A DNA stretch of 64,000 bases from Magallana gigas (lineage: Eukaryota). The DNA lies in NCBI RefSeq assembly GCF_963853765.1, contig NC_088858.1, positions 15,438,001-15,502,000 of the forward strand. The letters run 5' to 3'. Below are positions 24,017 to 29,473 of this stretch, one piece after another (the first letter of the stretch is position 1; each line of letters starts with the position of its first letter). The translations under genes were made by a program, and so were the position numbers. The notes beneath the pieces are model-generated. The model did not search any database, was not told the origin of the DNA, and worked only from the letters and a program-made list of their open reading frames with translations.

Positions 24017-27000
24017 GGTATTCGATGTATAACGAGATCGTATTTTCCCGCCCATTTCCGTAACAACTCGGAATCGGGGGATTCCCCTAGAGTTATCGGT
24101 CTTGTCGATAAGAGTTATCGTTTTGAAGCGAACAAAAATGGGCGCCAAGAGGGATGGCCGAGGCCGCTTTACGAGCAATCTTCCGAAACGAGTGCGATTT
24201 AAGAAGACTTATGTTACTACAGAACATAATTACCAAAGCGGACATCAGTGCCCTGGGGATTCGTGTACGTACAAGAAATGTCCTTTATATAATAACGTAA
24301 AAAATCTTGGGAAAAATGTCAGTCGTGATTGGATGGATGGACGGCGGGTGATGGAGTTAGGGGTGCTGTTGGAAAACTTATCATCTTGTTCGCATTGTCG
24401 GATGGGTCCCATCCCTCTATATAAAGAGAACATTGTTGGAGAGAGACGGAGGGGTTTGGGGGGATATTTATACATAATGTGTATGAATCCCGAGTGCGGA
24501 GAAGTGAACATGGTTCCCTATGGTAAAACGCACCGCCGAAATAAGAAAACAACTGGGATGCCGTGTTTTGTAGTAAATACAAAATTGGGAACAGGTTTGT
24601 GAATTTTTATGATTTTAAACCAAATTTAATATAACTGGTATAAACAACAAGTAACAAATAAATATTAGTGCACATCAATTTTCATCATAATTTTCTAATA
24701 TTATATAATGAAAAAAATATTTTTAGCAATGATTGACAGTCTTGGGGGGCCAGACAGAGTCAACAACCTTCTGTCAACTTTAAACATTCCTACTATAAAC
24801 AACAAGACATTAATGGTGATGGAGCGCCGTGCAGGAGAAAGTGTGGAAGCTGTAGCTAAGGTTACTACGAAGAAGGCGGCTGAGGAAGCTTATCATGTGG
24901 AAATGTCGTAAGTTATATTCAGTTTACTTTTTCTGTTCTGATGAACCAAAAAAAATCATATGATTATTTTTTATTCTAAATAAATTGTAGACAATCCATC
25001 ATAAACAGTTGTATTATTTTTTTTTCAAAGTGAAGTTGCTGATGCAGAGTCGACTAAAGCTTTGCAAGGAGTAGAATTGCTAGAGGATTTGGGTGTTGGG
25101 GTTTTAGCAGATGCATCACCGATAACAAAGTAAGTTTTTAAATTGAAACACTTAATATACACATGTACAAGAAAAAATGTTCACAGTTGTATTATTGTAA
25201 TTTGTATATTTATAATTTTTTTTTATAGAGAGATTCTGCTAAAGACCAATTTGCCTGTCACGTTTGATGACTCTGATAATGAATTGGCTGATACTGACCA
25301 CAAACGGTAAACAAAATCAACAATATTTATCTTAAGAAAACATATTTAACGATTGTAATTTGTAAATGAATTTGCATTTTAAAAAAAATTGTTTATGTTC
25401 GCTGTTCGCTATTCATTAAAAATTAAATTTCATAATTCTAGAGATAACACAGGCATGGAATCCTGTATTCCTTTAGGACACTCCGACCCTTCTATTGCAC
25501 AGATGACAATTCCAAACACTCCCACAGTTGGTCAAACAGAGTAAGTTTATTATTCTTGCATATCACGTGTACTTTGCATATAATTTGTTTATATACAAGA
25601 CACACACATATATATATATATACATGTAATCCTTGTGAATATGACATTATATAATGTCTCTAAATTTATGAAGGCTCAGTAATTGTATTCTATGAAATAA
25701 TTATAGGGACGACACTGTTTGCACACCAGTTAACACAACTTGTCCACAACCCTCACCATCAAGGAAAAGAAAAAGATCTTTGTCCAAAGGTACAGGCAAG
25801 AAAACTGTGAACCAAAAGCTGGACAAAAAGTTCTCATGCAAGACCAGGAGGGGTATGACTTGTGCTGTGGATACAGCTTGGCATAAACGAGGATTCAATA
25901 GCCTCACAGGTATTTGGATTTTTTTAAATGTATATTGTTTGTATAGAAAGTGATTTTTATCAATGCCTGTGTTTATTGTAAGGGTTTGAAGAAATATTAG
26001 ATCATTGTATAAAAATTGATGGTTCAGTTTTCACAGTAACAAAATGACATTAAAATTTACAAAAAATATATTTATTTTTTTATAGCACATACATTTTTTA
26101 TGAGCAAGTCAATATACGGAAAGAAAGTACTAAAGACAGTAGTTGGTCACAGGACCTGTGGAACTTGCCACTGGTGGAGACGGAATCGTCCTGGCATCCC
26201 AGTTAGAAAACATCGATGTGTTCAAAACCATAATGGTAGTGCAAGAAGCATGGAGAGTTCGACTGGTCTCAAAGGAGTAAAGGAGCTGATTGATGAGGGA
26301 ACACCTGTGGAGTACATTGAAGGGGATGGGGACAATATGTTAATTGCCCGTTTACGATCAGAGCTGAATTTGGAGATGAAGAAGCGTTTTGACAAAAACC
26401 ATGTGGTGAAAAACATTGGGAAGTGTTTGTTTTCTCTAAAGGGGAAAAAACTAAGTAAAACTGTTATTATGCATATACAAAAGTGCGTGAAATATGCTTT
26501 TTCGAAAAATCAGGGTAATAAACAAGGATTAGAAGAAAATCTTAGAGGACTTATTCCACACCAGTTCGGGGACCACCAGTACTGCAAACCAAGATTTTGT
26601 GGGTTTTTGCGTAAACAAGGAGAGACATATCAACACAGAAGCTTGCCATACAAATCAGCATTGAAAGACACAGATTTACGACAACAATTAGAGGCAGTTT
26701 TTAAACCTATCATAGCCAATGCTGAACAGTATATTGATCTTGGATCGAGTCAGCAGTGCGAGCACGCTAATCGTGAGGTAACACTGAGAGCTCCGAAGTC
26801 CCTCCATTATGGAAACTCCGAGTCCATCGACTTTAAAGTTCATGCTACTGCAGCTTTTATCAATGAAGGACGAAGATATATCTCAATGGTAGATATGTTG
26901 CAAATATAAGCATTGTATTATTGCTTTTGAGAATTGAATTGAATGCAAGTTATTTTGTGTTAGAGTTTTGAGGTGAAGCTATTAAAATATTTTCATATGC

Positions 27001-29473
27001 AGAAATTTATAGAAAAAGTTATTGAAACCTCTCAAATATTTTAAATTTCCACCCAAATATGAAAATTTCCACTAGGTATGGTGAAAATATTTTACCTTGG
27101 CTTCAGTTCATGTTCTGTTATTTATTTTATTTTGACTTACATTGAATACCTTTTATTTATATTAATTTTTTTTCCAGTTTATACTAATGTATGGAGACAA
27201 TTTCCAGACTCAGTAAGTTCTTAATTATTTTCTTGCTATCAATATGTATGAAGTTTAAAATAAATGGAAGATTTATTTTTTTATAAAATACTAAAAATCA
27301 ATAAATATATTGAAATGCCTTTTTTACCCTAAAAAAAAATCCATTATGCATAATTAATAAAAATTATTTATATCAGGCCCATGAAGAGAGCGGAGTTTCT
27401 CCTGGAAAGTTTACCGAAGAACATGCCGGGAAAAGGATGAAGAGACGCAAGGAGGTGCAGGAAAAAATTCAGCTCCCTTCAACAAAGCTAAGACGTCTTG
27501 TTCTGAAACAAGAAAGAGCTGTAACTCAGGGAGCCCAGGAAGCACTGGAGGGAGATTCCTATCAGTCTGGTAAGTCTAGACCGATATATTTTATGTACAC
27601 TACAGAAATGTACAAATACTTTACTGTCATCATGCTTTAACATATATATTTACCGATACACATAATGTATACTTATCTTAACAGGTATTGGTCACAATGA
27701 GCATCCTGATATTGAAAAATTACCAGATCCAGTTGTTCCTGGTTGCTTCAAACCAGTGACTCTACCATCAGCAGAAGAGCCTACGTTGGTTATGTTTGAT
27801 CTTGAAACCACTGACCTTAGTGAGTTTTCTTAGTTATCTTTTTTCATGTTTTCATTTTTAAAATGTTGAAATGTATTATCAAAGATATTTTAATTGCTAA
27901 TAATATATTACAGTACGAGGAAGGCAGATGCCCCATATTGTGCAAATTGCTGCTGTAGAGCTGAAAAGTGAGGCAACATTCAATACCTATGTTCGACCCA
28001 AGATGCCTCAGACTGAGAACGCACGACTAGTAACTGGTATTGTTGCAAATTCTAGTGGCGTGTCTGTTGCAGGTAAATCAGTGAAGTCCGACAATATTCA
28101 TTCTGCTGCAGACAAATTTATCAGATATTTGACAAAATTCAAGAATGTGTGTTTAATTGCTCACAATGGCCGGCGTTTTGATTTTCCTGTACTTGTTTCG
28201 ACATTCAAAAACATACAGAAAGACACTCAGCTTTCCAGTGTTGTGACTGGTTGTGTAGACAGTCTAGCAATGTTTAAGAAGTGTTTTAAAAATCAAGATT
28301 CATACAAGCAGGAAAGTCTTTACCGATCCCTTTTTAACGAAACATACGGTGCCCATAATGCGGTAGACGATGTGAAGGCCCTAGGGAAGCTTGTGCAGCA
28401 TGCATTGCTATCACATATAGATACCCTTTCCTTTACATTTCCTCTCAAAGCAGTAATCCAGCAACTAATCTACAATGGTGAAAAAGCTAGAAACTATAAT
28501 TCCTTGGCAACACTTGTGCAGAATGCTGTTCTTTCAAAGTGTATGGCAGGAAAAATAGCTGGATCTGGGCTGACTCTCGGACATCTTAAGGCGATCAAGA
28601 ATCGTGATGGTGAAGACGGACTCAGAAACACTTTTCTTGTTAAAACAGAAGGACAATCAAGAGTAAGCTGCACTAAGAAAACACTAGATGATGTTGTATC
28701 AAAACTCATGAGTGCTTTGTAAATGATTGTAAAGTCAAGTACTGGAAAACATGCTTATTTTGAAGAACCATTTATATATGTGTGTATATCTATGTAATAT
28801 AAGTATATGCATTTACATATAAATATATTCACTATTCTGATGTATTTATACATTATGTATCTGATTGTAACATTTCAAATGAAGATATCAAACACTTGAG
28901 TTGATTAAGCATGTTTATATATATCAGATTAGCACTTCTCAGATTTTACATTTTGGGGGGAGGGGTAGTAGAAACTAGAATTTTAAAAAAAATTGACGGT
29001 AAAAAAACAAAATTTGTATCTGAATTTGTTGCTTATAGATGTCTTTAAATTATTGTTATACCAAATATTGGTGCACTTTCATACTTTTTTTTATTTTGGG
29101 CCATATTGTACACTTGTCTGTATTTCACTAACACATTCTTGGAAGCCATGTTTGCAGTTTGTGTGAAAAAAAAATTATAAGACCTTCATTCTTGGATTTG
29201 TTTTTTATTGCATTCTCTTTCTTATATATTTAACTAAATAATATGAATCTATCATACAGTTCTTTTTGAATTATTGGATATTATGAACTGAGGTTTAATA
29301 TTACATTTAGTGCTGAAGCACCGAAAACATCAATGGCATACTTTTCCAAATATTTTGAAAACAACAAGGTAAATTTTCATTCTTTTTTATAATATGGTAC
29401 TGAGATATATGCTTATTGTAAAAATGAAAAGTAGAGGTCTATACCTGATTTAGGTCGTTATACATTGAATACC
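24017..29473 (+). mobile_element. Kolobok-type DNA transposon, 5,457 bp, apparently intact
   Basis: TTAA at 24013-24016 and 29474-29477. TIRs GGTATTCGATGTATAACGA (24017-24035) and TCGTTATACATTGAATACC (29455-29473) match at 18/19 positions. TTAA TSD with RR..YY ends is the Kolobok signature. It encodes a DDE transposase. Confidence 0.88.
24138..28722 (+). CDS. DDE transposase (Mutator-like/Kolobok type) fused to a C-terminal DEDDh 3'-5' exonuclease; 10 exons, 1018 aa
   Basis: Exons 24138-24594, 24727-24907, 25031-25129, 25229-25306, 25442-25540, 25707-25909, 26086-26888, 27377-27569, 27685-27819, 27914-28722. All introns are GT-AG, the phases are consistent, and the total is 3057 nt without an internal stop. 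Candidate DDE residues: AVDTAWHKRG, EGDGD, SSQQCEHANRE. Exonuclease motifs: FDLETT, AHNGRRFDFPVL, AHNAVDD. Confidence 0.9.

What the first reader, a model, noticed from the sequence alone, without database searches (positions are those of the whole stretch)
24017..29473. Intact Kolobok-type transposon encoding a spliced DDE-transposase / DEDDh-exonuclease fusion
Seen in sequence: TTAA duplication, 19-bp GG..CC TIRs, and one 10-exon ORF (1018 aa, no stop, consistent phases) filling most of the element. The ORF track shows only three disconnected fragments. The protein has an N-terminal Cys cluster (CSHC...CMNPEC), a DDE core (AVDTAWHKRG / EGDGD / QQCEHANRE) with an inserted CGTC..H..C motif, and a complete DEDDh nuclease (FDLETT, AHNGRRFD, HNAVDD). 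Established knowledge: classical Kolobok elements are TTAA-specific and typically carry a separate accessory ORF. Inference: a covalently fused 3'-5' exonuclease could trim ends during excision or repair, or degrade host-defence nucleic acids, making this a one-polypeptide cut-and-trim system. Kolobok subgroups with accessory nucleases have been catalogued, so this may belong to a named lineage. I cannot check that here.
Basis: partly seen in the sequence, partly recalled or inferred. Interest (0 to 1): 0.85.

Follow-up and report, generated by a model that had tools for sequence, protein, structure and literature searches.

The report
Oyster KolobokD transposon with gating micro-exon
This is an intact, expressed copy of an already named kind of jumping gene (KolobokD: a cut-and-paste transposase followed by a DNA-trimming exonuclease) in an oyster genome, but its RNAs carry a conserved 35-base exon that puts the two enzymes in different reading frames rather than fusing them.

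Summary
The sequence observation holds. Window 24017-29473 has 19-nt GG..CC inverted ends with one mismatch, TTAA on both sides, and a 10-exon, 1018-aa open frame. Four genomic insertions, plus one in Saccostrea, have the same ends and TTAA flanks. The protein has every Kolobok signature, followed by an intact DEDDh exonuclease and a SAM-like PML_C domain. Kojima & Bao (2022) already named this lineage KolobokD, so the architecture is not new.

The "one fused polypeptide" reading is only partly supported. The fused frame is ancestral: 67 of 150 relatives span the junction. It shifts the frame. The transposase ORF (672 aa) then stops at a TGA overlapping the ATG of a 358-aa exonuclease ORF.

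This exon and its splice sites are 44/47 identical in the Saccostrea element, against 55-58% in the flanking intron. That conservation suggests it is selected. No transcript with the direct fusion junction was found.

Side lead: the exonuclease module is closest to fish Plex9, and shares its two-domain layout with vertebrate PML and fly Exuperantia.

The parts
24013..24016 (.). Left TTAA target-site duplication
   Evidence: the same TTAA flanks occur at 3 other genomic copies and in Saccostrea
24017..24035 (+). 5' terminal inverted repeat GGTATTCGATGTATAACGA (starts 5'-GG)
   Evidence: (I4)
24138..24594 (+). Exon 1: start codon, N-terminal Cys cluster (CSHC...CMNPEC), start of PF20700
   Evidence: The junction to exon 2 is supported only by homology to the intronless relative P0141 and by a dip in raw-read depth. 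No splice joint was seen.
24727..24907 (+). Exon 2 (PF20700 positions 85-136)
   Evidence: donor joint 24907>25031 seen in RNA
25031..25129 (+). Exon 3 (lineage-specific acidic insert)
   Evidence: joints; absent from distant relatives
25229..25306 (+). Exon 4
   Evidence: joints
25442..25540 (+). Exon 5
   Evidence: joints
25707..25909 (+). Exon 6: basic stretch and first catalytic Asp (D360, codon 25870-25872, AVDTAWHKRG)
   Evidence: joints
26086..26888 (+). Exon 7: CCHC finger (C397 C400 H415 C417), D453/D455 (26325-26333), DxxH (D475..H478), HHCC finger (H531 H536 C539 C544), E598 (26760-26762)
   Evidence: (PF20700 1.5e-29)
27178..27212 (+). It has consensus sites (ttccag|...ACTCA|gtaagt) and shifts the frame by +2.
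   Evidence: Joints 26888>27178 and 27212>27377 in 3 RNA runs and in transcript contigs L009 and L011. Exon plus splice sites are 44/47 identical to Saccostrea, against 55-58% in the flanking intron.
27377..27569 (+). Exon 8: conserved linker (AHEESGVSPGKFT...). It holds TGA 27438-27440 (end of the 672-aa ORF1 when the cassette is included), which overlaps ATG 27437-27439 (start of the 358-aa ORF2).
27685..27819 (+). Exon 9: Exo I motif FDLETT (D743 27798-27800, E745 27804-27806)
   Evidence: joints
27914..28722 (+). Exon 10: Exo II (H833 N834 D839), Exo III (H897, D902), SAM-like PML_C domain, stop codon
28723..29454 (+). 3' untranslated region
   Evidence: transcript contigs reach 29161-29478
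29455..29473 (-). 3' terminal inverted repeat (ends ...CC-3')
29474..29477 (.). Right TTAA target-site duplication

Best explanation
Window 24017-29473 is the only full-length copy in this oyster assembly of a KolobokD DNA transposon. KolobokD is the Kolobok-superfamily lineage whose DDE transposase is followed by a DEDDh 3'-5' exonuclease.

Shown here:
- 19-nt GG..CC inverted ends and TTAA duplication.
- Deletion derivatives and copies at other loci.
- Transcription from the + strand with splicing.
- All Kolobok catalytic and zinc-finger signatures.
- An exonuclease with intact DEDDh residues, joined to a SAM-like PML_C domain.

Also shown: the assembled mRNAs have 11 exons. A 35-nt exon (27178-27212), conserved in Saccostrea, sits between the two enzyme modules. 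It shifts the frame so that a 672-aa transposase ORF ends at a TGA overlapping the ATG of a 358-aa exonuclease ORF.

Inferred:
- The transposase binds the inverted ends through its N-terminal Cys cluster and cuts and pastes at TTAA.
- The cassette exon acts as a splice-controlled gate. When included, the product is transposase without nuclease. When skipped, the product is the ancestral 1018-aa transposase-exonuclease fusion.
- The exonuclease, fused or free, trims 3' ends of excised or gapped DNA intermediates, as Kojima & Bao proposed.
For: Ends and TTAA.

Copies: C2 99% with a deletion, C5 96-97% with a deletion, C10 93-94% with an insertion. Only the window copy has all exons.

Other insertion sites in other animals: contigs run from the ends into different flanks.

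Kolobok signatures invariant in 24 relatives: D360, CCHC, D453/455, DxxH, HHCC, E598. Their layout matches the description in PMC9587614 and the curated Kolobok_1/7/9_CGi alignment rows.

Exonuclease: D743, E745, D839, H897 and D902 are invariant. Pfam gives RNase_T plus PML_C. The model has pLDDT 93 and best matches Plex9.1 at TM 0.9.

The fusion is ancestral: 8 of 8 long relatives carry all three domains, 67 of 150 span the junction, and P0141 is one uninterrupted 820-aa ORF.

Cassette exon: joints at depths similar to neighbouring joints in 3 runs; L009 and L011; 8 Logan ORFs carry the YISMFILMYG tail and none carries YISMAHEE. It is conserved 44/47 against 55-58% intron identity, P about 3e-8. 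The same TGA/ATG overlap occurs in Saccostrea.
Against: Logan contigs drop rare variants, so a minority skipped isoform cannot be excluded. Raw reads gave no coverage of that region.

No splice joint was seen for intron 1. Several contigs from RNA libraries are unspliced there and may be DNA or pre-mRNA.

The older C10 copy lacks the cassette donor (GAATGT), so the exon is not universal in the family.

Other families' split transcripts were found through a length-biased search.

No mobility or enzyme assay exists, and Repbase/Dfam could not be searched.
Confidence: 0.72

Rival explanations
1. One reading: the working product is the single 1018-aa transposase-exonuclease fusion from a 10-exon mRNA. 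On this view, the cassette-containing RNAs are unproductive by-products or decay targets.
For: The 10-exon frame is open. The linker across the junction is conserved as protein, and fusion is the family norm. In the cassette form, the stop codon lies 129 nt upstream of the exon 8/9 junction, so that form could be a target of nonsense-mediated decay (inference).
Against: No RNA source shows the 26888>27377 joint. The cassette form is assembled at the same depth as constitutive junctions. A by-product exon would not be expected to stay 91% identical, with both splice sites 6/6 identical, inside a 55-58% identical intron.
Confidence: 0.2
2. A true two-protein system. The 11-exon mRNA is bicistronic, and the exonuclease (358 aa) is translated separately, by termination-reinitiation at the overlapping AUGA or from shorter transcripts. 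It would then act in trans with the 672-aa transposase.
For: The TGA/ATG overlap is present in all copies and in the Saccostrea element. Many transcript contigs carry the 358-aa ORF. M. gigas UniProt models list it as a stand-alone protein.
Against: Reinitiation after a 672-codon ORF is generally inefficient in eukaryotes (established knowledge). The Met is not conserved in sister families, and the L023 family has no AUG before Exo I. Most 358-aa contigs come from a different, truncated copy joined to an unrelated repeat or to DnaJ exons.
Confidence: 0.15
3. It is not a mobile element any more. It would be a domesticated or decaying copy whose ORFs persist by chance.
For: The family is low-copy, and no paralogous empty site was found.
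Against: Both ends and the TTAA are intact, copies are 99% identical, deletion derivatives exist, and other animals carry copies in different flanks. All catalytic residues are intact.
Confidence: 0.05
4. It belongs to another TTAA-using or Mutator-like superfamily (piggyBac or MULE) rather than Kolobok.
For: The TTAA duplication is shared with piggyBac, and the Pfam hit is named 'Mutator-like transposase'.
Against: The ends are GG..CC, not CCC..GGG. No piggyBac or MULE Pfam family matches. The 4-bp duplication differs from the 8-11 bp of MULEs. The DxxH motif plus two zinc fingers follow the Kolobok layout.
Confidence: 0.02

Closest known systems
KolobokD lineage of the Kolobok superfamily (Kojima & Bao 2022, Mob DNA 13:24, PMC9587614)
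   Same: TTAA duplication; 5'-RR..YY-3' ends; DDE with C/DxxH; a zinc finger before the E; a CCHC finger after the first D; an encoded DEDDh (DnaQ) exonuclease resembling Exu/TREX; found in molluscs.
   Different: The paper gives only a short description. It reports no intron-exon structure, no expression data, no cassette exon and no link to PML/Plex9. This family's motif strings were not found in its held supplements.
Kolobok0 (Kolobok-1_XT type) and KolobokE
   Same: Same superfamily signatures. KolobokE also places a nuclease downstream of the transposase.
   Different: Kolobok0 carries a separate KolX ORF. KolobokE's nuclease is of the PD-(D/E)xK lambda-exonuclease type, not DEDDh.
piggyBac
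   Same: TTAA-specific insertion.
   Different: piggyBac has a different transposase fold and family, CCC..GGG ends, and no exonuclease. No Pfam match here.
Fish Plex9.1, vertebrate PML-I C-terminal (exon 9 / PXL) domain, and Drosophila Exuperantia
   Same: The exonuclease module is closest to Plex9-type chains: profile E 3e-57 to 3e-50, against Exu 2.5e-17 and TREX1 about 1e-11, and TM 0.9. The EXO + SAM-like two-domain layout matches PML 603-849 and Exu. The DEDDh residues are intact, as in the active Plex9.
   Different: Those are host genes with no transposase. PML (PXL) and Exu have lost the catalytic residues (PMC13659232). Plex9/PML are reported only from jawed vertebrates (PMC10123124).
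P-element third-intron (IVS3) splicing control (own knowledge, not tested here)
   Same: A splice choice inside a transposase gene decides between a full-length product and a truncated one.
   Different: There the mechanism is intron retention, giving a repressor that lacks catalytic parts. Here a cassette exon leaves the DDE core complete and removes only the nuclease module. Tissue specificity is unknown.

Membership tests
Kolobok superfamily | [quoted passage not shown] | tested here: met
   TTAA on both sides of 4 genomic copies and of the Saccostrea element, each in different flanks
Kolobok superfamily | Termini 5'-RR ... YY-3' (unlike piggyBac) | tested here: met
   GGTATTC...GAATACC; criterion from PMC9587614
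Kolobok superfamily | [quoted passage not shown] | tested here: met
   D360, D453/D455, D475-K-N-H478 and E598 are invariant in 24 relatives
Kolobok superfamily | Zinc finger between C/DxxH and the catalytic E | tested here: met
   H531, H536, C539 and C544 are invariant; layout as in the Kolobok_1/7/9_CGi rows of Data S5
Kolobok superfamily | Placement of the DDE core inside the Kolobok clade, or a match to Repbase/Dfam Kolobok consensus sequences | not testable with these tools
   No Repbase or Dfam access. Only a by-eye motif comparison with the published alignment and Pfam PF20700.
KolobokD lineage | Second (CCHC) zinc finger just after the first catalytic D | tested here: met
   C397, C400, H415 and C417 are invariant; criterion
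KolobokD lineage | DEDDh (DnaQ-type) exonuclease encoded with the transposase | tested here: met
   RNase_T 5.8e-11; D743, E745, D839, H897 and D902 invariant; fold match
KolobokD lineage | Transposase and exonuclease made as one polypeptide | tested here: inconclusive
   The fused frame is open in the DNA and is the norm in relatives. The observed mRNAs carry a frame-shifting 35-nt exon. The paper does not say whether fusion is defining.
piggyBac | piggyBac-type DDD transposase and CCC..GGG ends | tested here: not met
   No such Pfam hit; the ends are GG..CC
MULE / MuDR | 8-11 bp duplication and a MULE transposase domain | tested here: not met
   4-bp TTAA; only PF20700 matched, with no MULE, SWIM or DBD_Tnp_Mut hit
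Plex9 / PML-CDE / Exu exonuclease-like family (module level only) | DEDD-fold EXO domain followed by a SAM-like C-terminal domain | tested here: met
   PML_C 6.4e-20; Plex9 chains E down to 3e-57; human PML 603-849 and Exu are the top Swiss-Prot fold hits over both domains

The most novel reading that the evidence does not exclude
The EXO + SAM-like nuclease module of KolobokD transposons may be the source of the vertebrate PML exon-9 / Plex9 exonucleases, and perhaps of insect Exuperantia. On this reading, PML's C-terminal domain, said to appear first in jawed vertebrates, would be a domesticated transposon nuclease.

The evidence shows close homology and the same two-domain layout. It does not show direction: the transposon could instead have captured a host gene. 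No paper in the searched library links PML or Plex9 to Kolobok.
Probability: 0.3. Interest if true: 0.75.

Novelty: new member of a known kind. Interest (0 to 1): 0.42.

Why it matters
As a transposon it is ordinary: KolobokD was named in 2022. Three things are useful.

1. This is a structurally complete, expressed copy with evidence of recent mobility, and its ends are now defined. It is a natural candidate for testing what a transposase-linked 3'-5' exonuclease does during TTAA cut-and-paste.

2. The conserved 35-nt frame-shifting exon suggests that the element controls by splicing whether the nuclease is attached to the transposase. This layer of control has not been described for Kolobok.

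3. The nuclease module's close kinship to Plex9 and PML offers a testable origin for a vertebrate genome-defence domain.

Tried and rejected
- Empty site: both flanks are repeats, and no place in the genome joins them.
- Kojima & Bao supplements: no 'KolobokD' label and none of this family's motif strings were found. Only general Kolobok rows were read.
- Vertebrate Plex9/PML sequences: the word-indexed protein search reached only invertebrate relatives, so no tree with vertebrates could be built.
- Ends on the intronless TARA scaffold L021: no TTAA-flanked inverted repeat of at least 13/16 was found.
- Fusion junction peptide YISMAHEE: absent from all 398 proteins fetched.
- In-frame alternative acceptors for the cassette (lengths 27-42 nt): none has an AG (read). 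The Saccostrea NCBI model stays in frame only by using a donor 7 nt downstream, and that donor does not exist in the window.
- PDB codes 9L85/9L8B: the literature search returned unrelated papers.
- PF20700: not mentioned in any paper.
- ATGA overlap as a co-evolved feature: weakened, because the Met is also present in the C10 copy, which lacks the cassette donor.
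Full report
**What is in the sequence**

A TTAA at 24013-24016 is followed by GGTATTCGATGTATAACGA. The reverse complement of that sequence, with one mismatch, ends at 29473 and is followed by TTAA.

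I rebuilt the gene model by enumerating frame-preserving GT..AG pairs. Ten exons (24138-24594, 24727-24907, 25031-25129, 25229-25306, 25442-25540, 25707-25909, 26086-26888, 27377-27569, 27685-27819, 27914-28722) give 3057 nt, or 1018 codons plus a stop.

Pfam places PF20700 ('Mutator-like transposase') on exons 1, 2 and 7. It places RNase_T plus PF25244 (PML C-terminal domain) on exon 10.

**It is a repeated, mobile family**

The window's assembly is 564 Mb. It is an oyster genome, and the nearest named proteins are from Magallana gigas.

It holds several other copies:
- a 99% identical copy with an internal deletion (C2);
- a 96-97% identical copy with a larger deletion (C5);
- a 93-94% identical copy with a 1.2-kb insertion (C10);
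- fragments on C3, C7 and C8.

All copies with both ends have the same inverted repeats and TTAA on each side, in unrelated flanks. Only the window copy keeps every exon.

Contigs from RNA libraries of other animals run from the element's ends into flanks unlike any in this assembly. The element therefore sits at other sites in other individuals.

A Saccostrea echinata locus carries the same family at about 70-80% nucleotide identity. It has identical ends and TTAA flanks. No paralogous empty site exists, because both flanks are repeats.

**Family assignment**

An alignment with 23 relatives shows these invariant residues:
- D360;
- a CCHC finger (C397, C400, H415, C417);
- D453/D455;
- DxxH (D475..H478);
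- a second finger (H531, H536, C539, C544);
- E598.

Kojima & Bao (PMC9587614) describe exactly this layout for Kolobok. They also give the TTAA duplication and RR..YY ends as defining features. They name a lineage, KolobokD, that carries the extra CCHC finger and encodes a DEDDh exonuclease, and they found it in molluscs, arthropods and cnidarians.

Rows of their curated alignment (Kolobok_1/7/9_CGi) show the same motif order. No piggyBac or MULE family matched.

I could not search Repbase, and the KolobokD sequences themselves are not in the held supplements. Clade placement is therefore untested.

**The fusion is ancestral**

A library-wide search with exon 7 found 1214 relatives. Of the best 150, 67 run from the transposase through the linker into the exonuclease in one ORF. 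All eight long relatives that I scanned carry PF20700 + RNase_T + PML_C.

One of these, P0141, is a single uninterrupted 820-aa ORF on a marine metagenome scaffold. It aligns straight across the window's exon 1/2 and exon 7/8 junctions. Named relatives come from Pecten, Mizuhopecten, Mytilus, Mya, Ostrea and Mactra.

**What the RNA shows**

I laid contigs of three RNA-seq runs from three studies, plus raw poly(A) reads of a fourth, on 23800-29700.

Seven predicted introns are confirmed base for base: 24907>25031, 25129>25229, 25306>25442, 25540>25707, 25909>26086, 27569>27685 and 27819>27914. In the raw-read run, first mates lie only on the minus strand within the element, which is what most stranded libraries give for a + strand RNA.

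The predicted junction 26888>27377 was not seen. All three runs instead show 26888>27178 and 27212>27377, at depths like those of the other junctions. Two independent transcript contigs (L009, L011) carry the same 35-nt exon within otherwise fully spliced mRNA.

The exon has consensus splice sites (ttccag|TTT...ACTCA|gtaagt). With it included, the transposase frame reads ...YISM-FILMYGDNFQTQPMKRAEFLLESLPKNMPGKG and stops at TGA 27438-27440, giving 672 aa. That TGA overlaps ATG 27437-27439, which opens a 358-aa ORF holding the linker, the exonuclease and the PML_C domain.

That 358-aa ORF is what UniProt lists for M. gigas as a stand-alone 'exonuclease domain-containing protein'.

Among all fetched proteins of this family, eight Logan ORFs end with the cassette tail. 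None contains the fusion junction.

Three limits apply:
- contigs drop rare variants, and the raw reads did not cover this part;
- no joint was seen for intron 1, where the contigs are unspliced and only a depth dip (0.08, against 2.17 and 1.18 in the bins either side) and homology support splicing;
- RNA libraries can contain DNA.

**The cassette exon is conserved**

Between the window and the Saccostrea element, the exon is 32/35 identical and both splice sites are 6/6 identical. Identity is 55-58% in the flanking intron, with many indels, and 67-79% in the adjoining coding exons.

The chance of 44/47 identical positions at intron-level identity is about 3e-8. At exon-level identity it is about 0.004.

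In Saccostrea, the included form stops at the same TGA overlapping the same ATG. The NCBI model for that locus stays in frame only by choosing a weak donor 7 nt further on, and that donor is absent from the window.

The young C2 copy has the cassette donor. The older C10 copy reads GAATGT there.

Transcript contigs of three other bivalve families also carry short inserts at exactly this junction: 38 nt, 74 nt, and 84 nt with an in-frame stop. Each separates the two ORFs. Those contigs were found through a search restricted to short exonuclease ORFs, so they show recurrence, not frequency.

**The exonuclease module**

D743, E745, D839, H897 and D902 are invariant, so the DEDDh site is intact.

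By sequence, the nearest solved structures are Plex9-type chains. The single-sequence search gives E 3e-21 to 5e-16. A profile of 17 transposon modules gives 3e-57 to 3e-50. These are far ahead of Exuperantia (2.5e-17) and TREX1/2 (about 1e-11).

An AlphaFold model built from alignment A1, whose first sequence is P0151 residues 60-358 (97% identical to the window's product), has pLDDT 93.3. Its best PDB match is Plex9.1, at TM 0.9 by target and rmsd 2.1 Å. Its best Swiss-Prot matches are human and mouse PML (residues about 603-861) and Drosophila Exuperantia, each over both the EXO and SAM-like parts.

The PML literature reports Plex9 and PML only from jawed vertebrates and does not mention transposases. 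The KolobokD paper mentions Exu, TREX and ERI1 but not PML. No paper in the library links the two. I could not fetch vertebrate sequences, so the direction of descent is open.

**How it most likely works**

Shown: the ends, the target site, the catalytic residues, expression, the exon structure and the conserved cassette.

Inferred: the transposase recognises the 19-nt ends through its N-terminal Cys cluster and performs DDE cut-and-paste at TTAA. Splicing of the 35-nt exon then decides whether the nuclease is attached.

When the exon is included, which is the form seen, the product is a complete DDE transposase without the nuclease. The nuclease ORF is left downstream, and it could be reached only by inefficient reinitiation or from other transcripts. 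When the exon is skipped, which was not seen, the product is the ancestral fusion.

The nuclease probably trims 3' ends of excision or gap-repair intermediates, as Kojima & Bao proposed. An alternative, by analogy with TREX1 and Plex9, is that it removes excised DNA that would otherwise be sensed. Neither role is tested.

**Verdict**

The Kolobok assignment and the domain calls are right. The lineage is already named. The 'one-polypeptide' claim is not what the available RNA shows.

The reads call used 5901 letters.

Another first-stage note in this genome (s1-364131) reports a similar Kolobok + DEDDh element on another contig. I did not test it.

Noticed in passing
window 27916-28719 (exon 10); model mcd3221b99909: The transposon's exonuclease plus SAM-like domain is the closest non-vertebrate relative I could find of fish Plex9. 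It shares its two-domain layout with vertebrate PML exon 9 and fly Exuperantia. No paper in the library links these to Kolobok.
   Followed up: partly
L010, L012-L018 (Logan transcript contigs); P0381 = XP_034312949.1: In other oysters a truncated copy begins at window position about 27434, just before the ORF2 ATG. It is joined upstream to a high-copy repeat (at least 264 candidate copies in this genome) and has a different 3' flank. An NCBI C. gigas model (764 aa) joins DnaJ C-terminal-domain exons to this exonuclease ORF. This could be a host-transposon chimera or an annotation artefact.
   Followed up: partly
window 27138-27152: A 15-nt exact copy of the 3' end sequence (TACATTGAATACCTT) lies inside intron 7, 25 nt upstream of the cassette exon. 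It is partly kept in Saccostrea. It may be a relic of a nested insertion or an internal transposase-binding site.
   Followed up: no
window 23914-23989: Directly left of the element lies a 27-nt-arm near-perfect hairpin repeat (96% complementary). It belongs to a very abundant family (729 first-look candidates) and is heavily represented in RNA contigs.
   Followed up: partly
L022, L025 (Logan contigs of other bivalve families): These transcripts join the exon holding the first catalytic Asp directly to the linker exon, with the DDE core exon missing. The result is exonuclease-only ORFs of 356-393 aa. They could come from deletion derivatives or from exon skipping.
   Followed up: no
L019 (Mya arenaria), P0001/P0002: The DDE core is 68-71% identical in protein to copies in the clam Mya arenaria. 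That seems high for such distant bivalves and may point to horizontal transfer.
   Followed up: no
L001 (C10 copy): The older copy has GAATGT instead of GTAAGT at the cassette donor, 22 gap positions in exon 7 and a 1.2-kb insertion. It is a decayed copy that either lost the cassette donor or never had it.
   Followed up: partly
L027:6236-8105 (Saccostrea echinata): The Saccostrea family member has about 1.9 kb of extra sequence in its 3' untranslated part relative to the window copy.
   Followed up: no
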